IMG/VR virus record: IMGVR_UViG_3300031933_000215
Location: 124,001-188,000 of that record
DNA: 64,000 nt
Strand: one strand, 5' to 3'
The notes beneath the pieces are model-generated. The model ran no database searches, had not been told where the DNA came from, and saw only the letters and a program-made list of their open reading frames with translations. Positions 5,620 through 64,000 of the stretch are shown here, piece after piece; the first letter of the stretch is position 1, and the number at the start of each line of letters is the position of its first letter. Both the position numbers and the translations under genes were made by a program.

Positions 5620-5952
5620 ATGCTTTGGAAAAACTATTTCTTTACCGTGGATTTCAGTGAGGAAGCTGAGTTCTTCAAACGGTTTGACGAAGGGGACACC
5701 CTGACCGGTCAGGACGCCGAAACGATGGCGGGGATTTTCCAGGAACGCGACCCCCACCCTTCCAAACAGGATCGGTGGAACGTGAACCCGGAACACGATT
5801 ACAGTCTAATGGACGCTAAGGTGGTGTATCATGGCATCAACACGGACTTGATGTGTACCAACGCCAAGTTCAACCGTGTGTTGGTATTGGATTTTGAACC
5901 GACGGATTGCGATCAGCCCGACGGACGCGTGTACTTGCAGTACAACGTGTAA
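5620..5952 (+). CDS. Short virion protein (C-terminal module of the paralog family)
   Basis: YSL.DA.VVY.G.N...TNAKFNRVL...VYLQYN resembles the C-termini of ORFs 990 and 1962. Confidence 0.6.
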   Translation: MLWKNYFFTVDFSEEAEFFKRFDEGDTLTGQDAETMAGIFQERDPHPSKQDRWNVNPEHDYSLMDAKVVYHGINTDLMCTNAKFNRVLVLDFEPTDCDQPDGRVYLQYNV

Positions 5953-6022
5953 CTAGGGGTTTGCGTGGGGTCCATGGGCGCCACCAAACGTTCCATTAAC
6001 CGATGCAATCTGTGAGGCTATC

Positions 6023-40752: not shown

Positions 40753-43242
40753 TCAGGCTATGGTTACGTGTTGGTTGTAGGTTTGTGGGACGGTGATGTT
40801 GTTGGGGTCCAAGACACAGATCTCGGCTTGGTTGAACGCCCCGTGTACGGATGAGAAGTGGGAGATGTAGAAGATCTGGTTGACCTGACCCAACTCCATC
40901 ATGCGGTTCAAGAACGGAATCAGGTTCTGACGGTGTTGCTCGTCAAAGGTACTGCCAAACTCATCCAGGTACAACGGGTAGTGGGAGATGTTCAAGAACT
41001 TCATCACCAGCAGTTTGAACGCGAAGTTCACGATGTCCCGTTGGGAACTGGAACCCAAAGCGATGTCTGGGGCCGTGACCGACCCGTTGTTAACGTCCAG
41101 TGGGAACTTGTACGTCAGTTCGTCTTTTTCCATCGGGGACGGCATGACTTTCATTGGGTACGTCCAAATCTCATCACTGACGCTGTTGATGAGTTTCACC
41201 ACCACCTGCATGAACCCCATTAAGTAACGACCAATCAACCCGTCGGTGGGGCCGAGGGCCTTCACCAAGGCCTGATACTCTTTTTGGGCCGTGACGCTCT
41301 GGTCGTGTTGGGTTTGTATCTCACGCAGCACCCCTTCACGGACTTCCATCCGCGATAGCGACTCTTGTTCCTGAGCCAGCTGTATTTGCAAGTGACGGGT
41401 CTCTTCGGAAATGGCGTCCTGATACAGCGACTCCCGGTGCGTGTCCATGTCTTTAAAGAACGCTTCCAAATCCGCAATGGTGCTTTCCATGGCTTCTTTG
41501 AACCGAACCCGGTTGCGTTTGTGCGCGTCCAGTTCTTGAATTTCACGACCCAGTGTGCGTAACCGTTGGGTGGTGTTCTCGATCTCCTGTTCCAGTTGCT
41601 TACGGTGACGGTCGGTGCGGGTCAAAGCGTCCCGATCAATGGCATCCACGTAACGCAAGCGGTGTTCGATCACCTCCACTTCTTGTTTGAGTTCGTTGAG
41701 TTTGTTCAGGTTCTGCATGGCGTTGTTCCAGGACAACGCGTCGTTGAGATAATCCTTGGGCTGGCGGAACATGATTTTGTGCTCAACACACACGTCCCAA
41801 ACCGGCGCAAACCGTTGGTTTTCATTCACCAACTTCCGGAACGCCCGAACGTACGTCATGTACTCCTCGAACTTCTCTAGGTACTCCTTGAGGTGTTCCA
41901 TCTCCTTTTCAATCGCCGCAATGCGGGGACCACGTTCATCAATGGCTTGTTGGATGGCTTTGACTTCGGTTGGGTTCACCCCCGGTTGGAAGTCGTGTTC
42001 ACAGTTCGGGCAATGAACCGTCTCACACCCTTTGAGTCGTGACAACCGCCGCGCATCAGTGTTCTGATCGTTGTCCAAGGCCAGATGGGTTTTCTCCAAG
42101 TGCCGGTACCGCTCGTGGGCCTCTTTACCTTTCGCACTACTGAAACGCTCGTCGGCGTTGTTCGGGATAGTCTGAATCAAGTTGACCCATTCGTCGAATA
42201 CTTGTGCCAACGTCTCATGCGGACGACGGTCTTGGGGAATGTCCACCAGCGGGAAGATGCCTTGATAGTGATCCACGGCTTGTTTGGGTTCGAGCATCTG
42301 TTGGCTCAGTGACTTGACCTGTTGGCGCAGATCGTTGATTTGGGTCTCACTGAGTTCCGTGTCACGACTGGGAGCTTGTTCGTTGAGCTTCTGAAACTCC
42401 TCGGTCATGCGTTCCAACAACGTTTGCTGGCGACGGTACTCCTCGTTCTGTTCCGCACAGTACGCCTCAAACGCCGTTTCGTCTTCCAGTCCCGGAATGG
42501 CGTCCGGCAGCTGATAACGCAGTAGTTTCTCTGCCCGATCTGTCAGTGTCTTCAGATGATCACCCACCTCCCGTTCGTCCCGGTAATTCGATTGCACTCC
42601 GGCCTTGCGCTCTTCAAACAGCCGATCGAGTTTGGCGGTGAGTTCTTTGATGCGGGTTCGGTGATGACTCAAAACGTTGTCATCCGGTAGATCGTGATTC
42701 TCCTGACCCATACGCTTGGTCAGATGCTTCACCACGCCCTGCTGGTCTCGATGGGCCGTCTTGGCTTTATGGAACACGTTAAAGGCAAACCCCAAATCCA
42801 CCGGCGCCAGACGGGTGAGCCACTCCCGACGTTTGGCCGTGCTCAGGGAGGTAAACGGGGTGATGCCCACCAAGAGGTTATGGATCTCTCGGTTAAGACC
42901 GAACTCGTCCCACACCAGCTCCTTCTGAACCGCAAAGGTGTTGCCCTTGTTCAACTCCTCACCGTTCTTGACGAAGGAGTGATGGCCCGACCCGCCAGTG
43001 TACTCAGACACCAGTTCGTAATTGTCGTTCAAGTTACGCAGTCGCACTTCTTTACGACCACCTTTCGCAAACCCACTGTGGTGTGCAGGGAGCGGGGTAA
43101 GTTCTTCCAGGACCGACGACTTGCCCGAACCGTTACTGCCGATCAACAACTGCAGGTCCTGTTTCGGTCGGAACTCAAAACGTTGAATGTTCGACAACAT
43201 CAAACGCTTGTACTTTTCCAACAGCAAATAAGTAATGCGCAT
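40753..43242 (-). CDS. sbcC: SbcC/Rad50-like SMC ATPase
   Basis: Walker A GSNGSGKS, coiled coils, CPNC zinc hook, signature GSSSQ, Walker B LYLDEFG, ISH. Confidence 0.9.
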   Translation of the reverse strand: MRITYLLLEKYKRLMLSNIQRFEFRPKQDLQLLIGSNGSGKSSVLEELTPLPAHHSGFAKGGRKEVRLRNLNDNYELVSEYTGGSGHHSFVKNGEELNKGNTFAVQKELVWDEFGLNREIHNLLVGITPFTSLSTAKRREWLTRLAPVDLGFAFNVFHKAKTAHRDQQGVVKHLTKRMGQENHDLPDDNVLSHHRTRIKELTAKLDRLFEERKAGVQSNYRDEREVGDHLKTLTDRAEKLLRYQLPDAIPGLEDETAFEAYCAEQNEEYRRQQTLLERMTEEFQKLNEQAPSRDTELSETQINDLRQQVKSLSQQMLEPKQAVDHYQGIFPLVDIPQDRRPHETLAQVFDEWVNLIQTIPNNADERFSSAKGKEAHERYRHLEKTHLALDNDQNTDARRLSRLKGCETVHCPNCEHDFQPGVNPTEVKAIQQAIDERGPRIAAIEKEMEHLKEYLEKFEEYMTYVRAFRKLVNENQRFAPVWDVCVEHKIMFRQPKDYLNDALSWNNAMQNLNKLNELKQEVEVIEHRLRYVDAIDRDALTRTDRHRKQLEQEIENTTQRLRTLGREIQELDAHKRNRVRFKEAMESTIADLEAFFKDMDTHRESLYQDAISEETRHLQIQLAQEQESLSRMEVREGVLREIQTQHDQSVTAQKEYQALVKALGPTDGLIGRYLMGFMQVVVKLINSVSDEIWTYPMKVMPSPMEKDELTYKFPLDVNNGSVTAPDIALGSSSQRDIVNFAFKLLVMKFLNISHYPLYLDEFGSTFDEQHRQNLIPFLNRMMELGQVNQIFYISHFSSVHGAFNQAEICVLDPNNITVPQTYNQHVTIA

Positions 43243-43316
43243 GTCGTTACTTTCTCTATTTTGGCGGTTAATCTCTATAGGAAAAGACCCCACAGTAGAA
43301 GTTCAGGAGACCTCTA

Positions 43317-52791: not shown

Positions 52792-54279
52792 TTGACTGAT
52801 ACCAATGAAAACAAAGGTTTGGGATTGGTTCTGTATGCCGATGGCAGTTTCCTACCGCGTCGCGCGGGTTGGGGTCTGCATGGGTATACCTTCACCCCCG
52901 AACCGCTCGTGAAGAAACCCAAAGGTAAATTTCTACCAAGTGAAAAAGGATATTTGGAAACCAAAGAGTTGGATCAGACGGTCACGCCGGTTGTCTACAT
53001 TGACTGTTACGGTCGGGTTGAAACCAACCCCACCAACAACACCGCCGAGCTACAAGCCGTCATCGAGGCGATCCGACTGGCCATGCGGTATCCGGTCACG
53101 CACCTGCACATTATGTCCGACAGTGAATACGTGCGCAAAGGTCTGACCAAGTACGTGAATACATGGCAGAAGAACAACTGGACCAAATCCGACGGGCAAC
53201 CAGTGGCCAACCAAGACTACTGGAAAGAACTGTTGGATGTGGAGCGGGAATGGAAGGCCGCTGACCGGACCTTGGACCTCGTGTGGGTCAAAGGTCACTC
53301 TGGGGAACCCGGCAACGACGCAGCGGATGCGAACGCTAAAACCGCCAGCAAGTCTCAACGGCGCTATCGGTTTAAGGAAACCCCGGCCGAGGAGTACGCG
53401 GCCAAATTGCCGGACGCCAACCCCTTGATCATGAAGACACGGATGTTGTTCAACATGGGTGGGGACGGTACTACCGAACGGCCTGAGAGTAATACGTATT
53501 ACCTCTACCAGCTCGGTCGCATGCAAACCTATGGTGTGAAACAACATGACACTGTGATAGAGCGACACAATAAGAGCGATCTTTTGTTGGGCCGTCGAAT
53601 TGCAGATGCCACGTTTTGTGTCCTTCAAACCCCAGAACAGGACGAGTTTCTGGAGTCGTTGATGGAAATGCACAGCGACACACATAAAAAGGAAACCATC
53701 GAGCTGGCCGTAGCACGTTTGGACAATGCCTACAAAGCATCGGTTCAACAACGCCTGCGACAACTGGGTGGGATGAGTTTGATTGGACGCAAGGTTAATC
53801 ACAGCTTGGTGACCCCGCATGAGGATTTGGTCACCAAAACCTTAGACCCGCCCCGTTTGGCTCGGGAAGCTGTGAGTCAGTTTGCCATTCTTCAAGAGCG
53901 TCTGGAGAAACATCTGGCCGGGAAGTCCGGTCGGAGCGTTACCACCAAAGACATCACCGATGCATTTTATGCGGAGGAGAAAAATGGTAACAAAAAGACT
54001 AAGGTAAAACTTCATAAACACATTACGAACAACCTACCGTACATTGAAGTTCCGGTCGAGTTCAAAGACCAGAAACTGAACATTCGGTTGGTATTGGGTG
54101 TGGACATCCCGCAACGCAACCCACTGTCACGGATTGCTGAACTCAATCCCAAGGTCAGTGCGTTGGTCGTCGCAACAGGACCAGCGGCGTACTCGTTTGC
54201 GGTCGTGTTCGAAACGGACGACGGTAATGCCATCTACCAGTCGCCGTATACCCAGTTCGTTCTCCCGTTAACCAAATAA
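52792..54279 (+). CDS. rnhA: Ribonuclease HI with long C-terminal extension
   Basis: LYADGS, TNNTAELQA, SDSEYV, WVKGHSG.PGN..AD catalytic motifs. Confidence 0.9.
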   Translation: MTDTNENKGLGLVLYADGSFLPRRAGWGLHGYTFTPEPLVKKPKGKFLPSEKGYLETKELDQTVTPVVYIDCYGRVETNPTNNTAELQAVIEAIRLAMRYPVTHLHIMSDSEYVRKGLTKYVNTWQKNNWTKSDGQPVANQDYWKELLDVEREWKAADRTLDLVWVKGHSGEPGNDAADANAKTASKSQRRYRFKETPAEEYAAKLPDANPLIMKTRMLFNMGGDGTTERPESNTYYLYQLGRMQTYGVKQHDTVIERHNKSDLLLGRRIADATFCVLQTPEQDEFLESLMEMHSDTHKKETIELAVARLDNAYKASVQQRLRQLGGMSLIGRKVNHSLVTPHEDLVTKTLDPPRLAREAVSQFAILQERLEKHLAGKSGRSVTTKDITDAFYAEEKNGNKKTKVKLHKHITNNLPYIEVPVEFKDQKLNIRLVLGVDIPQRNPLSRIAELNPKVSALVVATGPAAYSFAVVFETDDGNAIYQSPYTQFVLPLTK

Positions 54280-54296: not shown

Positions 54297-54713
54297 ATGT
54301 CATCGAAACCTTCTGTAATAAGAGGATTCTACAACGTCCTTCTACATTTGTGGTTTTACCTCTGGTCCAATGCAAACGATCGATGCAAGCGCATGTTTGT
54401 ACTGTCATCCCTGTACGCACGACTCATGCGCTGCGACGAAGATGACCTGGAAGAACTCAAGGAGCTGAACGAAAACCTGGATCTCAGTAGAGACACCAGA
54501 GCTTTACGAACGCCTACGTTGTTCTCGACGTGGGTGTGGGGGAACACTTTACCGCTGGAACGTGTGAATCTTGACCGCGTGGATTCTTACGTGATGCGAT
54601 TGGTGAAGAAAACCCCGTGTTGGCTTTGGTATGCAGACCAAGAAACTCGCCGTAAAGACATTCAAGATCTGATCTTATACTGCGTGGAGCGAAAGACCAT
54701 GGCTGTGGGATGA
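54297..54713 (+). CDS. Hypothetical protein
   Basis: 138-aa ORF co-oriented after RNase H and ending before a terminator. Confidence 0.55.
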   Translation: MSSKPSVIRGFYNVLLHLWFYLWSNANDRCKRMFVLSSLYARLMRCDEDDLEELKELNENLDLSRDTRALRTPTLFSTWVWGNTLPLERVNLDRVDSYVMRLVKKTPCWLWYADQETRRKDIQDLILYCVERKTMAVG

Positions 54714-54730
54714 ACGTTCGATGAAGACGT

Positions 54731-54768
54731 CATAAAGGACTCCCCTCGTGTGGGGAGTCCTCTTATGT
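54731..54768. terminator. Bidirectional terminator
   Basis: AGGACTCCCC...GGGGAGTCCT stem between convergent genes. Confidence 0.75.
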
Positions 54769-54774
54769 CGCAAA

Positions 54775-55632
54775 TCAGCCAATGCGAATCAGTGTCCGTT
54801 CCATGTGTTTCAGTGCGGTGGTGGTGTCGATGATTCGGGTCACCTGCACCGAATACCACTCCACCCAACGACCGGCCAATTCCAGCTCGTCGGCGAGGGC
54901 TTTCAGTACTTGCTTACTGACGTTGCCGCGTTTCTTGATGGCACCGAACAACGACTCGGCAATCTTCACCAACGCTTGGGTGTCTTTCTGGACGTCCTTG
55001 GGGTTGGCTTTGGCCCACCGGACCTTGTTCACTTGATTGATGTGCGTCATGGCTTCAACGCACTGTTTGTTGTTTTCAAACAACTCACCGAAGTTAGCCT
55101 CGTTACTGCGGTTGCCTTCGATGTGCCACCGAGCCTCGGCTTCGATGTGTTTATTCAGCAGGTCGCGATTCAAGGCCATGATGCCTTCCTCAACGCGTTT
55201 TTCGTCGAGGTTGTCCAGGTCGTTCAGGTAGTACGCAAAACGCTTCCGACAGGCTTTGAGGACGTTCTCACGGATGGCGATGAGCGCTTCGAGACGTTCG
55301 GTGTCCAATTCTTTGCAGTACTGGTGAAGATTCCCCGTAAACGCCACCGGTTTGGCCACACGCACGTCGGCAAAATCGGTATAATGGTTCTTGCGCAGGA
55401 TGCCGCTGATTGACATGGCGTTCAGACCTTCCGGGCGACTGAAGTCCCACGTGGTCATGAAACGGAACGCGTCCTTCAGGGCCGCACTGAGTTTGGGCAA
55501 ACGCTCAGACACCACCTTTCCGATGTCGGATACGGCGAATGCCTCGTTGGAAACGGTTTGACAAGATTCCACCAGACGCTGAATTTCCAGAGTCTCGATG
55601 GCTGGGATTTGTGGGTTGTTGATCTCGGACAT
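54775..55632 (-). CDS. Putative head/virion protein
   Basis: VSNEAF candidate processing site near the N-terminus; helical; position beside UvsX as recalled for phiKZ-like genomes. Confidence 0.55.
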   Translation of the reverse strand: MSEINNPQIPAIETLEIQRLVESCQTVSNEAFAVSDIGKVVSERLPKLSAALKDAFRFMTTWDFSRPEGLNAMSISGILRKNHYTDFADVRVAKPVAFTGNLHQYCKELDTERLEALIAIRENVLKACRKRFAYYLNDLDNLDEKRVEEGIMALNRDLLNKHIEAEARWHIEGNRSNEANFGELFENNKQCVEAMTHINQVNKVRWAKANPKDVQKDTQALVKIAESLFGAIKKRGNVSKQVLKALADELELAGRWVEWYSVQVTRIIDTTTALKHMERTLIRIG

Positions 55633-55813
55633 AGTAAAACCTATTCAGCAGGTGGGTGGTGACGCGGGGTCACGAGTATTGTGTCATAGAATGTTCCCAT
55701 AATAAGAAGTTAACCCATGGCAGAAAAAACCACCTGAAGGCCCAATGAAGTGACTGTATGCTCACAGAAGCGCCTTTTCCTATTAACACTCAACCGGATA
55801 AGAAGCACTGTCT

Positions 55814-57274
55814 ATGTTTAACAAAGCATTTGCAAAACCACGGTTTCGACCAGCCATCAACGTTGGTTGTTTAATGGACGTTAGTACCGGTAAGTACGAG
55901 CGCGGGATTCACGGTGAGAACATCCTTAACGGGGGCATCTCCGGGATCACGGGGATCTGTGCTCGACCCAACAACTTCAAGACGGCGCTGGCGGTGTACT
56001 GCATGGCTATGCTCCGACGCTCGTGTCATCACTCGCACGCGATCACCTACGACTCTGAGGGGACACTGTATCCCGTAGGTCGTTTCACCGCCGTTTCCAA
56101 GAACGACGAGTACCTCTCTGAAATCGATTACACCGAAGACGAACAGTTCGCCTTCACGGACATCTCCCAGTACACCGGGGACGAGTTCTTTGACTTGTTC
56201 CGCAAGACCGTGAACGAGAAGACCAAGGATGAGAAATCCCATTTGGGTACCACCCCGTTTGTGGATATGCACGGCAAACCGCGCACTGCACTCTACCCGT
56301 CCGGTGGCATGATCGACTCCCTGTCGCGGATGACCGTGAAAGCGGTGGAAGACATCTACGACAAGAACGTCATTGGTGAGTCGGGCATGAACACCGAAGC
56401 CATGAACAACGGTCGGGCCAAGAAGCAGATGTTCAACCAACTACCGCAGATTTGTGCCCGTACCGGCACCTACCTGTTCCTGACCGCGCACGTAAAAGAC
56501 GTGATCAACATGGAGATGTACCCGACCGACAAACGGAACCTGTCTTACATGAAAAAGGACACGGTGCTCGAAGGTGTGTCCGGGGGGTTCTACTCGCTGC
56601 CCAACAACGTGTGGATGATCACCGCCAACAAGCCGCTGCAGAACAAAGACAAGATGCCGGAGTACCCGTGGGACAACTCCGAAGCCATGAAAGGTGACAC
56701 CGACCTCTCCATCCTCACCATGATGAACATTCGTGGGAAGAACGGGCTGTCTGGCTTCCCCATCGACATCATCGTGTCTCAATCCGAAGGGGTATTGGCC
56801 TCACTGTCCGAGTTCCATTATTGCAAGGACACCGACCGGTTTGGGCTGGGCGGTAACCTGCAGAACTATTACATGGAACTGCTTCCGGATGTGAAACTCA
56901 GTCGCACCACCGTGCGTCAGAAGCTGAACAAAGACTACCGCCTGCGTCGTGCGGTTCAGATCACGGCGGAACTGTTGCAGTTGATCCAGTTCCATCGCGA
57001 CATGGACCCGGGTCTGCTCTGTGACCCCAAGACCCTCTACGACGATCTGACTGCCATGGGGTACAACTGGGACACGCTGCTGGAAACTCGGGGGTATTGG
57101 GTGTTTGATGAAGAGCTCAAGGAACATCCACGGAAATACCTTTCCACAAAAGACCTGCTGGAGATGCGGATTGGTAAATACGTCCCGTGGTGGCTGAGCA
57201 AGGAAGAGAAAGCCAACCTGAAGATGGAGAAAGCGGCCGGCGCCAGTAAGGCGGAGGATAAATCAGCCGCATGA
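55814..57274 (+). CDS. uvsX: UvsX/RecA-like recombinase
   Basis: RP.INVGCLMD..TG, LNGG, variant Walker A ARPNNFKT, YDSE, IDSLS, RGKNG.SG. Confidence 0.8.
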   Translation: MFNKAFAKPRFRPAINVGCLMDVSTGKYERGIHGENILNGGISGITGICARPNNFKTALAVYCMAMLRRSCHHSHAITYDSEGTLYPVGRFTAVSKNDEYLSEIDYTEDEQFAFTDISQYTGDEFFDLFRKTVNEKTKDEKSHLGTTPFVDMHGKPRTALYPSGGMIDSLSRMTVKAVEDIYDKNVIGESGMNTEAMNNGRAKKQMFNQLPQICARTGTYLFLTAHVKDVINMEMYPTDKRNLSYMKKDTVLEGVSGGFYSLPNNVWMITANKPLQNKDKMPEYPWDNSEAMKGDTDLSILTMMNIRGKNGLSGFPIDIIVSQSEGVLASLSEFHYCKDTDRFGLGGNLQNYYMELLPDVKLSRTTVRQKLNKDYRLRRAVQITAELLQLIQFHRDMDPGLLCDPKTLYDDLTAMGYNWDTLLETRGYWVFDEELKEHPRKYLSTKDLLEMRIGKYVPWWLSKEEKANLKMEKAAGASKAEDKSAA

Positions 57275-57633
57275 TTGTCTACACTTACCAGTTGGCACAC
57301 TGGCGGCGATTAGCCAAAACCGGTGTGCCACTGGTTGACACAACCGTGAAAACCGGCGAGCTGCGTCTCGCGCCTTCCTGGGACATGGTCATGGGAATCA
57401 AGCGCGGGACGATCACTGAGGCGGAGTACACCCGCCTTTACCAGGCTCGTTTGGACCACTGGTGGTTTCAAGATCCTTTATTCTGGGATGAGTTGCTGAC
57501 TCATCCCGTTTTGGCGTTCGGCTGCTACTGCCGAGCGGGGACGTTTTGCCACCGTCATTTATTAGTCGAGTTCTTAAAACGCGTCACCCACGTAGAGTAT
57601 CGTGGCGAGCTGACCGGGGAACACGACCCTTAA
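57271..57633 (+). CDS. DUF488-like protein
   Basis: LAPSW, EY...Y...L, CYC....FCHRHLL motifs. Confidence 0.65.
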   Translation: MIVYTYQLAHWRRLAKTGVPLVDTTVKTGELRLAPSWDMVMGIKRGTITEAEYTRLYQARLDHWWFQDPLFWDELLTHPVLAFGCYCRAGTFCHRHLLVEFLKRVTHVEYRGELTGEHDP

Positions 57634-57651
57634 CCACATTCGGAGTTTATC

Positions 57652-57960
57652 ATGCCGCACCGCAACCACACCATCCGCACCAAAGTGTTTTACCTGATCC
57701 GCTACCACGACGTGGAGCTGGCGGAATCGTTCCTGCGTCACTGCCAACACGCCAACGACCTGGAAGACATCAACGCCTTCTTTCACCGTACCCTGGCTCA
57801 GATGACACCGGACACCACCGCCATCCGTTCGGTACTGGAAACCAACATCACCGAAGAGCAGTGGCTGCAGCGGTTTGACCAGCACGTGCTGCCGTTCCTG
57901 CGTGAGCATCGATTCCCTCCACTGTCAGGTAAAAACGTTCCGTCGCTGTATTCAGAATAA
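57652..57960 (+). CDS. Hypothetical protein
   Basis: GGAG RBS; operon position. Confidence 0.55.
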   Translation: MPHRNHTIRTKVFYLIRYHDVELAESFLRHCQHANDLEDINAFFHRTLAQMTPDTTAIRSVLETNITEEQWLQRFDQHVLPFLREHRFPPLSGKNVPSLYSE

Positions 57961-57969
57961 GGACATTCC

Positions 57970-58266
57970 ATGTCAATGGCAGAAGAGTTAGGTGTTCAAC
58001 CGGTCGTGGTGGCTGCGGCGTGTCGCGTGGGTGATGTCATGGTAGTCAGTGCCCGCCACTTCGATCTGTTGATGCATCAGCAAATCAAACAACTGGGCAT
58101 GACGAAAGACTTCCGGACCAAGGCCGAACAGGGGTTCATTGACCAGTTCGGGGAGTTCCTCGATCGGTTCGAGGCGTTGGAAGTAGCCAAGGCGGCCGGG
58201 CAGTTGAACGTCCGGCGTCCCAAAACGTTCCCTCAAGACCGGTTATTCAGCGAAGACATCTACTGA
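57970..58266 (+). CDS. Conserved small phage protein
   Basis: VVAAA, ARH, EQGFIDQ.G.FL.R.EA..VA..AGQ, LFSEDIY pattern common in phages. Confidence 0.6.
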   Translation: MSMAEELGVQPVVVAAACRVGDVMVVSARHFDLLMHQQIKQLGMTKDFRTKAEQGFIDQFGEFLDRFEALEVAKAAGQLNVRRPKTFPQDRLFSEDIY

Positions 58267-58321
58267 GCCCAGCGCGGGCTATTTTATGACAGAGCCCCCT
58301 AACACAAAGAGAGGTCATCGC

Positions 58322-58996
58322 ATGACACCCAGAGAAAAGGCCACGCAAGAATTGTTGTACTTCATCGACCGTTTCGCGCCCGGTTCCGAAAACCGGGCCA
58401 TTTATGAGAAGCGGCTGAACGCCATGTCGAACCGCGAGTTCGAAGCGTTCATTGAGCGGTTGGAATCAGGCAGTGAAACCCTGTCCTTGTTCATTCCGAA
58501 TCTGAGCGAGCACAAGCTCGACATCAACCGCAACTTCGAGATCGCCGAAGAGTTGGGTCACGAGTTCTACCAGCACTTGTACTTGACCGACCCCCAAACG
58601 GGTCAGGTGGTGAAAACCCCAGTCAAACACTTGGTGTTGATGTTGCCATTGCGTCGTCAGGCGCAGATGCTGTACAAGAAGATTTCCATACCGGAAAACA
58701 ACCGCGCTGTGGACGATCGTTCCGGCCAGCCCACCGGGCCGTCGAAAGGCGCCAGTATCTCGTACCCGGAACTGCAGGTAAACGCCGCCAAAGGTTTGGA
58801 CAACATGGTACTGGAGCTGATCAAGTACCGGGGTGGTGACACCCGGTCGTTCAACGCCATGAACCGCAGTATCATGGAAACCGGCGAAGCGTCAATGAAT
58901 GAAATCGATAGCGAAGGCGATACCACCGTAAAGTCTACTCAGACCCTCGACGTTATGCTGAAAGCCATGCACCTGAATAGCAATCTACGACAATAA
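58322..58996 (+). CDS. Virion RNA polymerase beta-subunit C-terminal fragment (phiKZ gp149-like)
   Basis: LP.RRQAQ.L.KKIS, D..SGQPTG.SKG..IS.PE, ELIKYRGGD resemble the RpoB C-terminus. Confidence 0.75.
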   Translation: MTPREKATQELLYFIDRFAPGSENRAIYEKRLNAMSNREFEAFIERLESGSETLSLFIPNLSEHKLDINRNFEIAEELGHEFYQHLYLTDPQTGQVVKTPVKHLVLMLPLRRQAQMLYKKISIPENNRAVDDRSGQPTGPSKGASISYPELQVNAAKGLDNMVLELIKYRGGDTRSFNAMNRSIMETGEASMNEIDSEGDTTVKSTQTLDVMLKAMHLNSNLRQ

Positions 58997-59005
58997 GGAA
59001 TCGCA

Positions 59006-59521
59006 ATGCTATCACTGTACGAAGAAGTCACTGTGGCCGTTACCGGCGCCATCGAAGAAGAGTTGAAGCTCCAACCGCGTGAGATGCACAATACGTTTTA
59101 CGCTTGGGCATTACGGTTGCGTCACGAGCACCGCATTTATTACATCAACGCGGACATGGCACGCGAACAACTGTGGGCCGAGCTGCGCCGGGACGAGAAA
59201 CTGCTTGACCTGATACTGCGTGCCAGCATCGGTTTTTACAACCGTTTGATGGACGATAACGGTGGCGACCACCGGTTTAGTTCGCAATGCACGACGTTGG
59301 CAAAAGGCATCAGCTCTGCAGTCAACAAAGCTGGGAGCGTTGCGGACGACACGTTCACAGAAAAAGTGCCCAAGCAGGAAACAGTGGCCAACTTGTTGCA
59401 GTCGGAAATCTGGTTGTGTTTCACCCTGTCGCTGGAGCGTTGCCTCACCCGTGTGATTCCCGGAAACCTACTCGAACCCCTGGTGGCACGAACGTCCGGG
59501 AGTAAAATAACGGAGGAATAA
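59006..59521 (+). CDS. Hypothetical protein
   Basis: AAGGA RBS; operon position. Confidence 0.55.
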   Translation: MLSLYEEVTVAVTGAIEEELKLQPREMHNTFYAWALRLRHEHRIYYINADMAREQLWAELRRDEKLLDLILRASIGFYNRLMDDNGGDHRFSSQCTTLAKGISSAVNKAGSVADDTFTEKVPKQETVANLLQSEIWLCFTLSLERCLTRVIPGNLLEPLVARTSGSKITEE

Positions 59522-59524
59522 CCC

Positions 59525-60235
59525 GTGCGTAAAATCTACATTGATTTGGACGGTCTGTTGGACACCCGACTGGGGACGGTGGCGAAGCTCAACCCCGAAG
59601 CGGCGATTCAGGTCATTCAGGGCGACCGTTATTGGGATCGGGAACACACGGACTGGCACGAACTGTCCAATGGGTACCTGAACAACGAGCAGTTCACCGA
59701 AGCCTGGGAACAGCGTGACAAGGAAACCCTGAGGGAATCCGTCATGACGTCGATCCTGGCGGTGCTGGGGCGGGTTCTGGCTGAGTACCACCAGAACATG
59801 AAAGAAGGCATGACAGCCGACGAGGTGGCGGTTGAAATCAACGTGGCCCCGTACCCGTTCGACGACGAGGAAATGGAGGAGCTGGCGGACATCCTTAAGA
59901 TGAACACGTACAAGGATCTCCCGGTGTTCTTCATCTCCCGTCCCTTGGACGAGCTCACCCCCGAATTCATCCGGGATAACTACGATGCCATGATCCTGTT
60001 TGATTTTCATCAATGGGTGCGCCACCACCACACGGCGTTGGTGAGGTGTCATTGTCGGGACGTGACGTTCATCATTCCCCGGTTGTTCGAGCGCAAACCC
60101 GAACGCCTGACGGACGAACAAAAGCGCGACGAGTTCGTGGCGTTCCGGTTGGGGTTCTTGGACCACTTGGAGCTGGAGTTCATCGACCCGTCGTGGTTCT
60201 CGATGTTCCGCCCATTGAACAAACCGCCCGAATAA
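59525..60235 (+). CDS. Conserved hypothetical protein, HAD-like N-terminus
   Basis: IYIDLDGLLDTRLGT (DxD); GGAGG RBS with GTG start. Confidence 0.55.
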   Translation: MRKIYIDLDGLLDTRLGTVAKLNPEAAIQVIQGDRYWDREHTDWHELSNGYLNNEQFTEAWEQRDKETLRESVMTSILAVLGRVLAEYHQNMKEGMTADEVAVEINVAPYPFDDEEMEELADILKMNTYKDLPVFFISRPLDELTPEFIRDNYDAMILFDFHQWVRHHHTALVRCHCRDVTFIIPRLFERKPERLTDEQKRDEFVAFRLGFLDHLELEFIDPSWFSMFRPLNKPPE

Positions 60236-60240
60236 TAAGT

Positions 60241-60265
60241 GCCGTCCTTCGGGACGGCGTTTATG
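60241..60265 (+). terminator. Rho-independent terminator
   Basis: GCCGTCC-TTCG-GGACGGC then GTTTAT; UUCG tetraloop. Confidence 0.8.
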
Positions 60266-60292
60266 CCGTCTTCAATTCCAAGCAAACTGACG

Positions 60293-60315
60293 CCTATATC
60301 ACTCAGGTGGTATAA
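60293..60315 (+). promoter_or_regulatory. Candidate early-type phage promoter
   Basis: CCTATATCACTCAGGTGGTATA, similar to 62872-62892 and to the phiKZ early motif TATATTAC. Confidence 0.4.
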
Positions 60316-60361
60316 CTCCAATCGAGTTAACCCTTATCACATTACTTTGAGGAAAAGTATC

Positions 60362-60535
60362 ATGATCATTAAAGTTGGCCCCGTAAGCTTCAACACCCGC
60401 AACAAGAAAATCAACTTGGATCGTCGGACCATCAAAGGTCAATCCGCCGCCAAACACGTCACCTACATTGCCGTGGGTGCCGCTGCAACCGCCGGTGTGG
60501 CCGCTGCGGTGAACTTCGTCAACCGTCAGTTTTAA
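60362..60535 (+). CDS. Small basic protein with C-terminal hydrophobic helix
   Basis: GAGGA RBS, ATG 60362; YIAVGAAATAGVAAAV. Confidence 0.5.
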   Translation: MIIKVGPVSFNTRNKKINLDRRTIKGQSAAKHVTYIAVGAAATAGVAAAVNFVNRQF

Positions 60536-60591
60536 TCGTAGGGTTTGTCAATGATGTGCATTATACTCAATTCAAAAGAGGAGTGATGACC

Positions 60592-61239
60592 ATGACCACC
60601 TATGAAACAAACCACGAAGCCAAGGCTTTGTTTGTGATTCTGATGGGGGCGATCCTGTTTGTCTTTGCCCAATTGCCGAACTCGATCGTCATTAACCATG
60701 CGTTCTTTGAACCGACCCCTGAGACTCAGGTGGTTGAGGTCGCCACTCCTAACGGGGTTAGCGGTAAGATCGTCCGCACCGTCCACGACGTACCCCCGGA
60801 AACCTGGCGGGACAACATTGCCATCGACCTACCGAAAGGTAACGATGTCATGACCGCCGATTGGAACGAAGTCGAATGCCTAGCGGTAAACATTTACCAT
60901 GAATCACGTAACCAATCCCAACTCGGGCAGGAGTTGGTAGCGCAGGTCGTGGTCAATCGGATGGAAAACCGACATTACCCCAACACCGCCTGCGAGGTCA
61001 TCCGTCAATCGTATCAGTTCAGCTGGACCCATGACGGTAAGAGTGACCAAGTTCGTGATCGGGTGGCGTATGAGAAGGCTTACACAACTGCAATAGAGTA
61101 TCTTCTATTGAAAAAAGTAGCTGATGTTGAAAACGCAAAACGTCTATTAAATTACCATGCCGACTACGTGAATCCAGGTTGGTATAATCTCACGGTCGCG
61201 GTAGTTGAGGGGGCGCATATTTTCTATACAAGGGGATAA
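60592..61239 (+). CDS. SleB-like cell wall hydrolase (Hydrolase_2) with N-terminal TM anchor
   Basis: CLAVNIYHESR, VAQVVVNR, YPNTACEVI.Q..QFSW, YHADYV.P.W, HIFY. Confidence 0.85.
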   Translation: MTTYETNHEAKALFVILMGAILFVFAQLPNSIVINHAFFEPTPETQVVEVATPNGVSGKIVRTVHDVPPETWRDNIAIDLPKGNDVMTADWNEVECLAVNIYHESRNQSQLGQELVAQVVVNRMENRHYPNTACEVIRQSYQFSWTHDGKSDQVRDRVAYEKAYTTAIEYLLLKKVADVENAKRLLNYHADYVNPGWYNLTVAVVEGAHIFYTRG

Positions 61240-61244
61240 GTAAA

Positions 61245-61898
61245 ATGGGTAGTGCTCTTGACTTAACAGGTAAGACCTTTGGCAGACTTACCGTTGTTCG
61301 TTTAGAACCTAAAGAAAAAGGTAGACGGCGCTGGCGCTGTCTATGTTCTTGTGGCAATGAGGTAACTGTGATCAGTTATCAACTTACGGGCAATAAAACA
61401 AAAAGTTGCGGGTGCTACCACAAAGAACGTGTTTCCAAAATGTTTCGTAAGCATGGTAAAAGCAATAACCCTACTTACAAAAGCTGGCAGGCAATGAAGA
61501 ATCGTTGTGGAAATCCAAAAGCCAGTGATTACCCATACTACGGGGGTCGTGGAATAAAATACGACCCCCGTTGGGAGGACTTCGAAGCTTTCTTAAGCGA
61601 TATGGGTGAGAAACCGACACCAAAACACACCATCGAAAGGATTAACAATGATGGGGATTACACAAAACAGAATTGTTATTGGGCAACTCGTTTAGAGCAG
61701 GCTCAAAATCAAACCCATAGTGCCAGGATTGAATACCGTGGTGTGGAACACACGTTTATGGAACTCTCCAGACGTACTGGGGTTAAAGAGTCTATGCTTA
61801 GATATCGGATTCGCGTCATGGGTATGAGCCCTGAGGAAGCAGTGGAAACACCAAATCGATACTCTAACAAACCCGATCCGCACTACACTTCGCTGTAA
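61245..61898 (+). mobile_element. Free-standing HNH homing endonuclease gene
   Basis: DLTGK.FGRLTV, W.C.C.CG, SCGC, SW..MK.RC, YGGRGI, TIERINNDGDY...NC.WAT..EQA.N; AT-rich relative to flanks. Confidence 0.85.
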
Positions 61899-61901
61899 GG
61901 T

Positions 61902-62258
61902 TAGGCCCGTGGTGAGCCCGAACTGGGCCAAGAACTCGTTGCTCAGGTCGTGGTCAACCGCATGAAGAAGAAATGGTGGCCTGAGACGGCCTGTGGCGTC
62001 GTCAGAGAGGCGTATCAGTTCAGCTGGACCCACGATGGCCGGTCAGACCAAGTCACCGATGAAGAGGCCTACAAGGAGGCGTACTTGATTGCGGTCGAGT
62101 ACCTACACCTCAAGAAGGTCGCCGAGTTGCCTTATGCCGAACAGATTGTCAACTACCATAATCACACTGTAGTACCCAATTGGGACAACATGCAGGCGGT
62201 TAGTACAGTAGGCAATCACCAGTTCTATCGACCCACGTACTACGTGACGTCGGCATAA
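61902..62258 (+). pseudogene. Orphan 3' half of a SleB-like hydrolase gene
   Basis: In frame from 61905: ARGEPELGQELVAQVVVNRM...ACGVVREAYQFSWTHDG.SDQV...HQFY, preceded by TAG where the catalytic Glu codon is expected. Confidence 0.8.
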
Positions 62259-62282
62259 ACAGAGGGGCGCGTGCCCCTCTGT
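62259..62282. terminator. Bidirectional terminator
   Basis: ACAGAGGGGC-GCGT-GCCCCTCTGT between convergent genes. Confidence 0.7.
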
Positions 62283-62301
62283 CACTCGGTCCTTTTCTTT
62301 T

Positions 62302-62811
62302 TTAATCACCCACGTCCTCATCCCCGGTAGGAGCCGGACGGACACCATTTTCCTTTTCCTTTTCCATGCGGGCCATGAACTCCTTGTAGGATTCATTGAC
62401 CACACCCACTTCGGTTTCACCTTCCACCAATTGATAATCGCCCAGCTTCTCCACATCCACACTGGGCGGCTGAAGTGACTCGGGTGCTGGTTGTTGGGGC
62501 ACAACGCCCCCATCGGTCGAACGCTGGAATGGGTTCTTGTTCTGCTGCATCTGAATGAACTCGCTCATGGCCTCGGCCACCTGTTTCGAGGTGTCGGCGT
62601 TGCCTTGGTCGATGTCGTTCTTCCGATCCATCAACACGGTCTTATCCATATCCCCCAGTGCCTTAAGGACAACGTTCAGTTCCTTGGGGTCACTGGGGAT
62701 ACTGCCCTCACCTACAAAGTGGTCGACGATGCGTTTTCGCACGCCTTGGCTGTAATTCAATGTCTCGCGATATTCCATGGTGGCATCGCCACCGTCTTTA
62801 TGTTCAGTCAT
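62302..62811 (-). CDS. Conserved phiKZ-like hypothetical protein
   Basis: L.YSQ..R..IV, LKAL.DMD motifs. Confidence 0.55.
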   Translation of the reverse strand: MTEHKDGGDATMEYRETLNYSQGVRKRIVDHFVGEGSIPSDPKELNVVLKALGDMDKTVLMDRKNDIDQGNADTSKQVAEAMSEFIQMQQNKNPFQRSTDGGVVPQQPAPESLQPPSVDVEKLGDYQLVEGETEVGVVNESYKEFMARMEKEKENGVRPAPTGDEDVGD

Positions 62812-62871
62812 GGGATTCTCCAGAGAAATTACGGGTTACTCAGACTCTATAGTACTGAAGCCGACTTTAGA

Positions 62872-62892
62872 CCTATATCATCAGTTTGGTAT
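62872..62892 (+). promoter_or_regulatory. Candidate early-type phage promoter
   Basis: CCTATATCATCAGTTTGGTAT in divergent intergenic region; resembles 60293-60315. Confidence 0.4.
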
Positions 62893-62950
62893 GACCAAAC
62901 CTAATAACGATGCGGTCTCGGAGACTTTTGTAAAACCATAGGGGACCTAC

Positions 62951-63451
62951 ATGTTCATACGCGCTTGGCGACTGCGCCGATACCGTCGTCTATTGGAAAA
63001 CTCATCCTTGGTGGTCACCGACAGTGAGACCATCACCAGCGAACTTGAGAAACTGTGGAGGTGCTTAAAACCAGAAGATCTTTTTCCCATTACCACCGAA
63101 TACCGCACGCAGCAACACGTGGCTGTGTGTTATCCCAACCTACCTGCCCTCGTGGCGGCGTTGAAAAACCAAAACCAACTGATCGCGGACGAAGCGGATG
63201 CGCAGTTGGAAAGAAGATTGGGACAGGACGGACGCGACACCAAGGTGGTCAGCTTGGACTTCTATTTGGCGGACGATCAACATCTCCCCATTGACGAGGT
63301 TCAGCTGTTCAACCGGTTACGCGGTTTGATCCAAGCCCATCACTGTCTGGTGACTCGGCACACCGGACATTTCTATGAAAGACACAGCGAGATGATCTAC
63401 AAGGATCTGGTCACTCTCATCCATGTGTTGATCAACTCAATCCAGTCATAA
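62951..63451 (+). CDS. Hypothetical protein
   Basis: 166-aa ORF, AGGGGA RBS. Confidence 0.55.
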   Translation: MFIRAWRLRRYRRLLENSSLVVTDSETITSELEKLWRCLKPEDLFPITTEYRTQQHVAVCYPNLPALVAALKNQNQLIADEADAQLERRLGQDGRDTKVVSLDFYLADDQHLPIDEVQLFNRLRGLIQAHHCLVTRHTGHFYERHSEMIYKDLVTLIHVLINSIQS

Positions 63452-63570
63452 CAGAGGTCAAACGATGACATAATGATTCCTATTGCGACTGTATAAAGGC
63501 GTCAGTCGCACGTCGTTTGTGTTTTCACAAACCGGGTCAGTCTGGCCCAGCACCGTAGGGTGATAATAAA

Positions 63571-64000
63571 ATGAATCAAGATGTAAAAGATCTGCTCGCC
63601 GATCCCTTAAAAGGAACGAACCGAGCGCAGGGCATACTGTGTTACCTGTTCCGCAACACCCTGTTGTGGCGCAAGGTCAACCAGTTTACGTGGAACAAGA
63701 GGGCAAAGTTATTCTTTGAAAAACCTCACAACAAAAAGAAGGCCGACAAAGGCAACTTGAACAAGGCATTAACCCACGACGATTTCACGTGGGCCACGTT
63801 CAAGAAAGGGGTCGATTTTCTCAACCCTGTGTCGGCAACACTGACCATACAACTGACGTGGAAAAGCGGTCGGGTCTCGCGTTACCCGATTAAGATTGAT
63901 CCCGCTGAAGACGAAGCCGATCCCGAACTGAATACGTTTGGGCCTGAGGAAAGCAACGTGTTCAGCGACATGAAAAAGCCAGCCAACACACTGGCCCGCC
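63571..64000 (+). CDS. Hypothetical protein, truncated by the window end
   Basis: Open frame from ATG 63571 (MNQDVKDLLADP...GILCYLFR...KGNLNKAL...TWATFKKG) with no stop before 64000; not in supplied track. Confidence 0.65.
   Translation, partial: MNQDVKDLLADPLKGTNRAQGILCYLFRNTLLWRKVNQFTWNKRAKLFFEKPHNKKKADKGNLNKALTHDDFTWATFKKGVDFLNPVSATLTIQLTWKSGRVSRYPIKIDPAEDEADPELNTFGPEESNVFSDMKKPANTLAR

What the first reader, a model, noticed from the sequence alone, without database searches (positions are those of the whole stretch)
60901..62258. Homing endonuclease that brought a replacement 3' half of its target gene
Seen: the intact hydrolase reads ...IYH-ESRNQSQLGQELVAQVVVNRM..., followed by the HNH gene, and 3 nt after the HNH stop comes TAG-ARGEPELGQELVAQVVVNRM..., a diverged second copy beginning exactly at the catalytic Glu position with the canonical ARGE motif. 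The orphan has genome-like GC-rich codons, while the end of the intact copy and the HNH gene look AT-richer. Inference: a cassette (recoded 3' gene half plus HNH) inserted at the active-site codon, keeping the gene functional and immune to cleavage without an intron or intein.
Basis: partly seen in the sequence, partly recalled or inferred. Interest (0 to 1): 0.7.

Follow-up and report, generated by a model that had tools for sequence, protein, structure and literature searches.

The report
Mobile nuclease cassette carrying replacement gene half
A 1,001-base mobile cassette in a jumbo phage sits in the active-site codons of a cell-wall hydrolase gene, supplies a foreign 3' half so the gene stays whole, and leaves the original 3' half stranded downstream, an arrangement known from fungal mitochondria that I did not find reported for phages.

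Summary

**What is there.** Window 60904-61904 is a 1,001-bp insertion. It consists of a foreign 3' half of a SleB/CwlJ-type hydrolase gene (60904-61239) and an HNH-like endonuclease gene (61245-61898). The displaced native 3' half (61905-62258) lies just downstream.

**Empty site.** An insertion-free relative (L014) has one hydrolase gene. Its 3' half matches the orphan (90% aa), not the resident 3' half (55%).

**Second carrier.** L017 is 98-99% identical to L014 in both flanks and differs essentially by this cassette.

**Mobility.** The cassette is 97.9% identical between the window and L017. Their backbones are only 85-89% identical.

**Site specificity.** Related nucleases sit at the same codons of hydrolase genes in two unrelated phage lineages:
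- L022 versus L023 shows the same breakpoint.
- L019-L021 show a mirrored version that appears to carry a replacement 5' end.

- The orphan starts one codon after the invariant Glu.
- Only the last 180 nt of the new half are AT-rich.
- The new half is a foreign allele, not a recoded copy.
- The nuclease matches no Pfam HNH model and lacks the canonical His.

**Not shown.** Cleavage of the empty allele is inferred, not tested.

**Precedent.** Fungal mitochondrial mobile ORFs (Allomyces atp6, Glomus). I found no phage precedent.

The parts
60592..60903 (+). Native 5' half of the SleB/CwlJ-type (PF07486) cell-wall hydrolase gene. It includes an N-terminal hydrophobic segment and ends with the invariant Glu codon GAA at 60901-60903.
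   Evidence: 102 of 104 aa identical to the insertion-free relative P0002/L014, and 94% nt identity. GC3 is 0.654. E104 is present in 174 of 174 representatives.
60904..61904 (+). The inserted cassette, 1,001 bp: foreign 3' gene half, 5-nt spacer, endonuclease gene and 6-nt tail GGTTAG.
   Evidence: Absent from L014: window 54611-61083 and 61905-64000 align to adjacent, overlapping parts of L014. The 226-kb contig of run X8 joins 60908 to 61911, skipping about 1,002 bases. The cassette is 980/1001 identical to the one in L017, against 85-89% for the flanks.
60904..61239 (+). Foreign 3' half of the hydrolase gene. It is fused in frame to the native 5' half, reads SRNQSQ... where the native allele reads ARGEPE..., and ends ...HIFYTRG with its own stop.
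   Evidence: 55% aa identity to P0002 and 54% to the orphan, against 67% to P0007, which has the same HIFYKRG-type end. It falls outside the native clade in the tree of 3' halves. The full PF07486 domain is matched, positions 2-100 of 100.
61232..61236 (+). Shine-Dalgarno-like GGGGA, 8 nt before the nuclease ATG and inside the last codons of the new 3' half.
   Evidence: Read directly from the sequence. Its function is inferred.
61245..61898 (+). Endonuclease gene (217 aa). Domains: an N-terminal Cys-rich beta domain, a helical domain, a beta-beta-alpha segment (residues 129-155) and a C-terminal helix-turn-helix.
   Evidence: PHROG 374 'HNH endonuclease', E 4e-70. No Pfam or NCBIfam match. 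AF2 model pLDDT 90. Best solved-structure match is PacI, Z 6.1, over residues 70-159. AFDB cluster matches are named HNH or AP2. It is the only copy in the 231.8-kb genome.
61905..62258 (+). Orphan: the displaced native 3' half of the hydrolase gene (117 codons, open). It has no start codon, lacks the invariant Glu, and is preceded by TAA GGT TAG.
   Evidence: 90% aa identity to P0002 residues 105-221. 85-100% nt identity to L014 in 30-nt bins. GC3 0.678. dN/dS against the L014 3' half is 0.13, so its divergence arose mostly while it was still under selection.
62260..62281 (.). Nine-bp GC-rich hairpin between the convergent hydrolase locus and the minus-strand gene 62302-62811. It is the likely shared terminator, now downstream of the orphan.
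   Evidence: Read from the sequence. The simple terminator scan did not call it, because there is no T run.

Best explanation
The 1,001-bp segment 60904-61904 is a mobile homing-endonuclease cassette of the 'mobile ORF with a carried gene end' type.

**Proposed mechanism**
1. The cassette's nuclease is HNH-superfamily-like and appears to lack the canonical catalytic histidine, as PacI does. It is proposed to cut cassette-free alleles of the phage hydrolase gene at the codons of the active-site motif (...NIY-H-E | A-R-G-E...). This would happen during co-infection with a related phage.
2. The break is repaired by homologous recombination from the cassette-bearing genome. The phage encodes its own UvsX-like recombinase.
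3. The native 5' half of the hydrolase gene serves as the left homology arm. The orphan 3' half and the DNA downstream serve as the right arm.
4. The cassette is copied in. The recipient's own 3' half is pushed downstream and becomes an orphan.
5. The gene is completed in frame by the cassette's foreign 3' half.
6. That half starts with a different natural version of the motif (SRNQSQ, with different DNA). Neither junction therefore rebuilds the target, and the carrier should be immune.

No intron or intein is involved.

**Shown:** the insertion polymorphism, the exact junctions, the foreign origin of the new half, the native identity of the orphan, the higher similarity of the cassette than of the backbones, and the same insertion point in other lineages.

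**Inferred:** nuclease activity, the cut site, immunity of the carrier, and muralytic activity of the chimeric enzyme.
For: 1. **Empty site.** L014 (226-kb contig) has one hydrolase gene. The window aligns to it on both sides of 60904-61904, with a 180-bp overlap that reflects the duplication.
2. **Near-isogenic filled and empty pair.** L017 carries the same hydrolase, nuclease and orphan arrangement. It is 97.8-98.5% identical to L014 outside the cassette. In the 600 nt on each side, L017 equals L014 at 598 and 597 positions. The only window-like bases are at 60900, 61907 and 61910, right at the junctions.
3. **Horizontal spread.** The cassette is 97.9% identical between the window and L017, while the flanks are 85.4%, 86.4% and 88.7% identical. 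dS is 0.05-0.07 in the cassette against 0.24-0.56 in the backbone halves.
4. **Native orphan, foreign new half.** Shown by identities, GC3 and the tree.
5. **Site specificity in a second lineage.** L022 carries a nuclease 66% identical to the window's. Against the nuclease-free L023 it is identical at 111 of 112 nt up to CAT GAG GC, then at 204 of 342 nt after it (Fisher p 8e-20). This is the same codon position as in the window.
6. **Third lineage.** In L019-L021 (GC 29%), nucleases 52-54% identical sit between a 15-codon orphan 5' fragment and a complete hydrolase gene. The break is at NIY|FE.
7. **The new motif is likely functional.** ESRNQ is the only copy in the nuclease-free phage L015/L016. 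The RNQ and RSE variants each occur in about 10% of 175 representatives, while E104 is invariant.
8. **The nuclease gene is intact.** It is preceded by a Shine-Dalgarno-like site. dN/dS between the two carriers is 0.15, based on only 11 differences.
9. **Recombination genes in the window.** UvsX-like recombinase, SbcC-like protein and RNase H.
10. **Not an assembly artefact.** The junctions are spanned by contigs of independent runs and samples.
Against: - No biochemical evidence exists that the protein cuts DNA.
- None of 64 family members matches a Pfam HNH model.
- The position of the canonical general-base His is an invariant Arg.
- Foldseek found no solved structure.
- The PacI match (Z 6.1) is in the range the tool itself calls ambiguous.
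- No donor with a closely related 3' half was found; the best is 67% aa.
- The L022 contig ends inside the nuclease gene, so an orphan cannot be seen there.
- No nuclease-free relative of L019-L021 was found.
- Six more distant family members show no flanking duplication, so the architecture is not general for the family.
Confidence: 0.8

Rival explanations
1. The cassette is a real foreign insertion, but it spreads by ordinary homologous recombination between co-infecting phages. The HNH-like protein is then a passenger, or has another role such as DNA binding or regulation, and does not cut the empty allele.
For: The family lacks the canonical catalytic His and matches no Pfam HNH model. It carries a C-terminal helix-turn-helix. 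The structural support for a nuclease fold is modest.
Against: The same codon position is occupied in three unrelated phage backbones by nucleases 52-66% identical to each other. That pattern is expected for a site-specific enzyme, not for random recombination. The foreign DNA ends within a few bases of the junctions in L017. PacI shows that a His-less member of this fold can cut, using a loop tyrosine (PMC5714182), and this family has an invariant Tyr139 in the corresponding loop. These proteins are annotated as HNH or homing endonucleases in many phage records.
Confidence: 0.13
2. The locus arose by tandem duplication of the hydrolase gene. The 5' half of the second copy was then deleted, and an endonuclease gene was inserted independently between the copies.
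For: There are two homologous 3' halves in tandem.
Against: The two halves are only about 57% identical in DNA, yet the orphan is 85-100% identical to the single gene of L014. L017 and L014 are about 98-99% identical and differ essentially by the whole 1,001-bp block. The new half groups with other hydrolase lineages. No relative with two complete genes was found.
Confidence: 0.02
3. The element is a group I or II intron or an intein. In that case the orphan would be the true downstream exon or extein, joined by splicing.
For: It sits in active-site codons, as many introns and inteins do. The nuclease ORF and the orphan are in the same frame.
Against: No Rfam intron family was found, even at a permissive threshold. 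The upstream ORF already encodes a complete PF07486 domain with its own stop. The nuclease is a separate ORF with its own start and ribosome-binding site. Stops (TAA, then TAG in the window) separate it from the orphan. No intein blocks were matched in Pfam.
Confidence: 0.02
4. The arrangement is an assembly artefact, a chimeric contig built from two co-occurring strains with different hydrolase alleles.
For: The window comes from a metagenome assembly.
Against: The same arrangement is found in independent assemblies from different studies and environments: L017 (Logan), L018 (TARA), L072 (JGI), and runs X4 and X6 (100% identical contigs) and X5. These contigs cross the left or the right junction.
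Confidence: 0.01

Closest known systems
Mobile endonuclease ORFs (mORFs) of fungal mitochondria that carry a foreign gene C-terminus: Allomyces macrogynus atp6; Glomus atp6, atp9, cox2 and nad3; Rhizopus atp9; Mortierella cox2; Endoconidiophora atp6 and cob (PMC3630166, PMC6279837)
   Same: The architecture is identical: native 5' part, then inserted foreign C-terminal in frame, then endonuclease ORF, then displaced native C*-terminal. The native copy matches close relatives (91-98% in Glomus; 85-100% here). The inserted copy is far more divergent (64-81% there; about 57% here). An ORF-less relative defines the insertion point.
   Different: The host is a bacteriophage genome, not an organelle. 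The nuclease is an HNH-like, Cys-rich plus HTH protein rather than LAGLIDADG or GIY-YIG. The target is the catalytic motif of a peptidoglycan hydrolase. Related elements in another phage lineage appear to use the mirror solution, a carried 5' end.
Intronless homing by free-standing phage endonucleases (T4 SegF, SegG, SegB, MobE; cyanophage F-CphI) (PMC2988022, PMC2790892, PMC6083498)
   Same: A free-standing endonuclease gene lies next to or within an essential or conserved phage gene. Spread is by double-strand-break repair in mixed infection, with co-conversion of flanking sequence. The resident allele is resistant because its sequence differs.
   Different: Those elements sit between genes, or split a gene into two working pieces. 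They do not carry a replacement gene half or leave a displaced duplicate. Here the insertion is inside the coding sequence and the gene is repaired by a carried segment.
HEG islands in ICP1-like and other phages (Barth et al. 2023, PMC10448857)
   Same: Nuclease genes mark the boundaries of exchanged DNA and travel with neighbouring 'cargo' sequence between otherwise divergent phages.
   Different: In my term searches of that paper, I found no report of a carried gene half together with a retained orphan of the recipient's own half. The nuclease families described there (T5orf172, IPA-HNH) are different.
PacI restriction endonuclease (PDB 3m7k/3ldy), His-Me finger group 20 (PMC5714182)
   Same: PacI is the best solved-structure match to the nuclease core (residues 70-159, Z 6.1). 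Both have a beta-beta-alpha segment flanked by Cys-rich motifs and an HTH. Both lack the catalytic His. PacI uses a tyrosine in the loop, and this family has an invariant Tyr139 there.
   Different: Sequence similarity is undetectable. The Z score is in the ambiguous range. PacI is a homodimeric restriction enzyme, not a mobile-element enzyme. Equivalence of the tyrosines was not tested.
Integrating elements that carry a replacement 3' end of their target gene, such as tRNA-gene integration by phages and islands (from general knowledge, not checked here)
   Same: The same logic applies: the element inserts into a gene, restores it with its own copy of the 3' end, and leaves the displaced native end beside it.
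   Different: Those elements use a site-specific recombinase and short identical att sites. They do not use a nuclease plus homologous repair, and the carried end is usually nearly identical rather than about 57% identical.

Membership tests
Mobile endonuclease ORF carrying a gene end (mORF type) | Presence/absence polymorphism at one precise site among close relatives | tested here: met
   L014 (empty) and L017 (filled) are 97.8-98.5% identical outside a 1,001-bp block. The X8 contig joins 60908 to 61911.
Mobile endonuclease ORF carrying a gene end (mORF type) | The inserted gene end is foreign: more divergent from relatives than the displaced native end, which matches relatives | tested here: met
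   New half 55% aa and orphan 90% aa to P0002. GC3 0.51 (0.40 in the last 180 nt) against 0.68. Tree.
Mobile endonuclease ORF carrying a gene end (mORF type) | The element is more similar between carriers than their genomes are (horizontal spread) | tested here: met
   97.9% for the cassette against 85-89% for the flanks. dS 0.05-0.07 against 0.24-0.56.
Mobile endonuclease ORF carrying a gene end (mORF type) | The encoded enzyme cleaves the element-free allele and not the carrier allele | not testable with these tools
   Only sequence is available. The two junctions differ from the empty site in most of the first 15 nt.
HNH / His-Me finger nucleases | Match to curated HNH family models | tested here: not met
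   No Pfam HNH model at E up to 1 in any of 64 family members. No NCBIfam match. Only PHROG 374, labelled HNH endonuclease, at E 4e-70.
HNH / His-Me finger nucleases | Beta-beta-alpha-metal fold | tested here: inconclusive
   The AF2 model (pLDDT 90) has strands at 129-132 and 144-147 and a helix at 149-154. The best solved-structure match is the HNH enzyme PacI, Z 6.1. Foldseek against the PDB found nothing. AFDB cluster matches are auto-named HNH or AP2.
HNH / His-Me finger nucleases | General-base histidine on the first strand | tested here: not met
   By my by-eye alignment to the HNH motif, that position is R132, which is invariant. H128 is not conserved. Y139 in the loop, N143 and N155 are invariant. 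This resembles the His-less PacI group.
PF07486 Hydrolase_2 (SleB/CwlJ-type lytic transglycosylase) | Full domain with the invariant catalytic-motif Glu | tested here: met
   Chimeric gene: E 2e-18, model positions 2-100 of 100. It aligns to the SleB structures 4f55 and 4fet across the GESRGE motif. E104 is present in 174 of 174 representatives. The orphan matches the domain but starts after that Glu and has no start codon.
Group I/II intron or intein | Intron RNA structure, or an in-frame intein with splicing blocks, interrupting the host ORF | tested here: not met
   No Rfam match at E up to 1 other than two chance-level hits. The host ORF ends with its own stop before the nuclease gene. No intein domains in Pfam.

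The most novel reading that the evidence does not exclude
One endonuclease lineage, His-less and PacI-like, has tracked the DNA encoding the catalytic motif of SleB/CwlJ-type hydrolases across unrelated phages (a 52% GC jumbo phage, a marine phage with a thymidylate-kinase neighbour, and a 29% GC phage). It avoids killing its host gene not by splicing but by carrying whichever gene end is cheaper to replace. In three cases that is a 3' half (window, L017, L022). Where the motif lies only 15 codons from the start, it is a 5' end with its own ribosome-binding site (L019-L021). This would be a third general solution, beside introns and inteins, for homing endonucleases that live inside coding sequence in viruses.
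Probability: 0.55. Interest if true: 0.7.

Novelty: new variant of a known kind. Interest (0 to 1): 0.6.

Why it matters
Homing endonucleases that target conserved coding sequence are usually thought to need an intron or an intein to avoid destroying the gene. In phages the alternatives described are to sit between genes or to split a gene into two working pieces.

This locus shows a phage element using the 'carry a spare gene end' solution, so far documented in fungal mitochondria. It comes with an unusually clean set of natural controls:
- a near-isogenic empty site;
- two diverged carrier backbones;
- the same target codons occupied in other phage lineages.

It matters in four ways:
- It gives a concrete route by which homing elements create chimeric lysis enzymes and leave gene fragments that annotators read as pseudogenes or extra small ORFs. 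The orphan is called as a 98-aa or 102-aa gene in public data.
- It offers a candidate site-specific nuclease with a defined natural target of about 30 bp.
- It is a case where a His-less member of the HNH-like fold may be active.
- It warns that 'duplicated gene fragment next to an HNH gene' in phage genomes can be a signature of recent homing.

Tried and rejected
- Nucleotide search of 50,697 phage records with the locus found no match. No cultured relative is available.
- The search for related loci with the orphan in viral contigs found nothing. With the chimeric protein it found only relatives at 47% identity or less.
- Pfam and NCBIfam gave nothing for the nuclease. A profile search of PDB sequences gave only a chance-level hit. 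Foldseek against the PDB gave nothing.
I did not try another route.
- The two SleB structure papers that name the catalytic Glu are not held. The assignment of E104 therefore rests on its invariance and on the alignment to the SleB motif.
- My attempt to extend the L022 lineage failed. The last protein search found nothing closer than 57%. The metagenome scan found only the window's own phage as a carrier.
- No nuclease-free relative of L019-L021 was found.
- A screen of six more distant nuclease loci for flanking duplications found none.
- Rejected: tandem duplication, intron or intein, and assembly artefact (see rivals).
- I first read the ESRNQSQ patch in L015/L016 as a conversion tract left by the cassette. 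I now hold this only loosely. RNQ-type motifs are common natural variants, and the nt similarity is modest: 50 of 63 against 44 of 63.
Full report
**Setting**

The window is bases 124001-188000 of a 231,818-bp virus record with direct terminal repeats. The window encodes tail and head proteins, an SbcC-like protein, an RNase H and a UvsX-like recombinase. It is a jumbo phage with its own recombination machinery.

The same phage is present, 100% identical across this locus, in gas-well, rock, subsurface and freshwater metagenomes. It is also in a further JGI sample, L072.

**The observation**

- A 215-aa ORF (60592-61239) matches PF07486 Hydrolase_2, the SleB/CwlJ type of cell-wall hydrolase, over the whole model (E 2e-18). 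PHROG calls it an endolysin.
- Five bases after its stop, a 217-aa ORF begins (61245-61898).
- After that ORF's TAA come GGT and TAG. At 61905 a 117-codon open stretch starts. It also matches the whole PF07486 model (E 4e-20).
- The two hydrolase copies are 56% identical in protein (E 3e-43) and about 57% identical in DNA.
- The genome holds no other PF07486 match and no other copy of the nuclease.

The closest full-length homologue, P0002 (77% overall), lies on a 226-kb contig, L014, from an oil-facility metagenome. L014 has one hydrolase gene and no nuclease.

The window aligns to L014 as two blocks: 54611-61083 (91%) and 61905-64000 (88.6%). On L014 these blocks overlap by 180 bp.

Codon by codon:
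- The window's gene is 94% identical to L014 up to and including CAT GAA (60898-60903).
- Identity then drops to about 50-80% per 30-nt bin.
- The orphan is 28-30 of 30 identical to L014 from its first codon.

In protein:
- The 5' half is identical at 102 of 104 residues.
- The resident 3' half is 55% identical to P0002.
- The orphan is 90% identical to P0002.

So 60904-61904 (1,001 bp) is an insertion. The orphan is the original 3' half, and the resident 3' half is foreign.

Composition agrees. GC3 is 0.654 for the 5' half, 0.678 for the orphan and 0.408 for the nuclease gene. In the new half it is 0.40 over the last 180 nt but 0.635 over the first 156 nt.

In a tree of 3' halves, the orphans sit with P0002-P0006. 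The resident halves sit elsewhere, and P0007 is their nearest neighbour by path.

**Evidence that the cassette moves**

A second carrier, L017 (with the fragment L018 from TARA), has the same three-part arrangement.

Outside the cassette, L017 is 97.8-98.5% identical to the empty-site L014. In the 600 nt on each side it equals L014 at 598 and 597 positions. The only window-like bases are 60900, 61907 and 61910, at the junctions. L014 and L017 therefore form a natural empty and filled pair, with a very short conversion tract.

Between the window and L017:
- The cassette is 980/1001 (97.9%) identical.
- The upstream flank is 85.4% identical, the orphan 86.4% and the downstream flank 88.7%.
- dS is 0.05-0.07 in the cassette, against 0.24 in the 5' half and 0.53 in the orphan.

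The cassette is thus much younger than the split of the two backbones.

The window's orphan differs from L014 with dN/dS 0.13. Most of that divergence predates its displacement.

**The same site in other lineages**

*L022 and L023.* The nuclease's closest relative (66% aa) is a truncated gene at the end of the TARA contig L022. It lies directly after a complete 183-aa hydrolase, P0008, whose C-terminus resembles the window's new half. A nuclease-free contig, L023 (P0009), carries the same hydrolase 5' part.
- The two are identical at 111 of 112 nt up to CAT GAG GC.
- After that point they are identical at 204 of 342 nt (Fisher p 8e-20).
- This is the same position as in the window, to within two bases.

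*L019-L021.* The next relatives (52-54% aa) lie in AT-rich contigs, 6 bp upstream of a complete 140-aa hydrolase gene. Just upstream of the nuclease there is a strong ribosome-binding site and a 15-codon fragment. It is homologous to the first 15 codons of the downstream gene and breaks off at NIY or TIF, right before FE(S/A)RS. This looks like the mirror arrangement: an orphan 5' end, then the nuclease, then a carried 5' end fused to the rest of the gene. I could not find a nuclease-free relative to confirm it.

*Wider sampling.*
- About 100 other hydrolase loci carry no such nuclease.
- Six more distant nuclease loci show no flanking duplication.
- The association is therefore specific to this sub-lineage.

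**Is the chimeric enzyme likely to work?**

Across 175 representatives, the Glu before the junction (E104) is present in all 174 that align. The second Glu of ARGE is replaced by Gln in 17, and the Gly by Asn or Ser in 17 each.
- E[AS]RNQ and EARSE are common natural motif versions.
- ESRNQSQ is the motif of the only hydrolase gene in the nuclease-free phage L015/L016.

I could not read the SleB structure papers to confirm which Glu is catalytic.

**What the nuclease is**

- It belongs to a large family: more than 1,400 proteins in the 5.8-billion set and 1,194 phage records. These are often annotated HNH or homing endonuclease.
- No member matches a Pfam HNH model. Weak hits point to a C-terminal helix-turn-helix.
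- Invariant residues are four Cys, H70, R87, R102, W110, R132, Y139, N143, W146 and N155.
- The AF2 model is confident (pLDDT 90) and has a beta-beta-alpha segment at 129-155.
- Foldseek finds no solved relative.
- The wide VIA search ranks the HNH restriction enzyme PacI first (Z 6.1, residues 70-159). The tool warns that this range is ambiguous.
- PacI is the known His-less member of the fold and uses a loop tyrosine (PMC5714182). The invariant Y139 lies in the corresponding loop.

I therefore call the protein HNH-superfamily-like. I treat nuclease activity as likely but unproven.

**Mechanism proposed**

1. The nuclease cuts cassette-free alleles at the motif codons.
2. The phage's recombination system repairs the break from a carrier genome.
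3. The native 5' half and the orphan serve as the two homology arms.
4. The carried 3' half keeps the gene whole.
5. Because that half begins with a different motif version, neither junction rebuilds the target.

A plausible origin is a nuclease gene sitting just downstream of a naturally resistant hydrolase allele, as in L022 or an L024-like gene. A break in a distant recipient would then have been repaired with homology only on the left, capturing the donor's 3' half and nuclease and leaving the recipient's 3' half in place. This origin story is inference.

**Comparison with what is known**

The architecture is that of the mobile endonuclease ORFs of fungal mitochondria: Allomyces atp6, Glomus atp6/atp9/cox2/nad3, and others. 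Those also show an inserted foreign C-terminal, the ORF, and a displaced native C*-terminal that matches relatives (PMC3630166, PMC6279837).

Phage endonucleases are known to home without introns, to co-convert flanks, to split genes and to bound exchanged 'islands' (PMC2988022, PMC2790892, PMC10448857). My three literature searches found no phage case with a carried gene half plus retained orphan. The searches match words literally and cover open-access papers only, so absence is not proof.

**Verdict**

The feature is real and well supported. The principle is known from another genetic system. What appears new is the phage setting, the nuclease family and the possible two-orientation use.

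Noticed in passing
L019:4914-5003 and 5643-6065; L020:654-719; L021:19-66: In an AT-rich phage lineage (GC 29%), a related nuclease (52-54% aa) lies between a 15-codon orphan 5' fragment of a hydrolase gene, which has its own ribosome-binding site, and a complete 140-aa hydrolase gene. The break is at NIY|FE. This looks like a mirror version of the window's cassette, carrying a replacement 5' end.
   Followed up: partly
L015:3119-3775 and L016:2685-3341 (P0004): A nuclease-free relative has a native-type hydrolase gene except for about 40-60 nt at the motif. There it reads ESRNQSQLGQELVAQ like the cassette, differing from the cassette only by synonymous changes in the first 14 codons. This may be an old conversion patch or a natural allele. 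RNQ motifs are common in the family, so the origin is open.
   Followed up: partly
window 61245-62258; L017:3171-4184: The nuclease ORF and the orphan are in the same reading frame. They are separated by TAA GGT TAG in the window and L018, but by TAA GGT TAT in L017, so only one stop separates them in L017. This is probably chance (one in three), and it was not examined further.
   Followed up: no
window 60362-60535 and 60592-60690: A 57-aa ORF with a hydrophobic C-terminal part sits just upstream of the hydrolase and is also called in L014 and L017. The hydrolase itself starts with a hydrophobic segment. Together they could be a holin-like or signal-anchor lysis pair.
   Followed up: no
window 55814-57274, 40753-43293, 52792-54279: UvsX-like recombinase, SbcC-like nuclease subunit and RNase H genes lie within the window. 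The phage therefore brings its own break-repair machinery, which homing would need.
   Followed up: partly
window 61950-62258: Public gene calls treat the orphan as a small gene: a 102-aa GTG ORF here and a 98-aa protein, P0150, in L017 and L018, each with a PF07486 hit. This is an annotation trap, because the product would lack the invariant Glu.
   Followed up: partly
runs X1-X8; L014, L017, L018: The carrier phage occurs in gas-well, rock, subsurface and freshwater metagenomes. The empty-site relative occurs at high depth (95x) in an oil-production-facility metagenome. The second carrier type occurs in marine samples. The host is unknown.
   Followed up: no
L023:451-1167 and L024:699-926: In the second hydrolase lineage, the nuclease-free alleles are followed directly by a thymidylate kinase gene. 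What follows the nuclease in the carrier L022 is unknown, because the contig ends.
   Followed up: no
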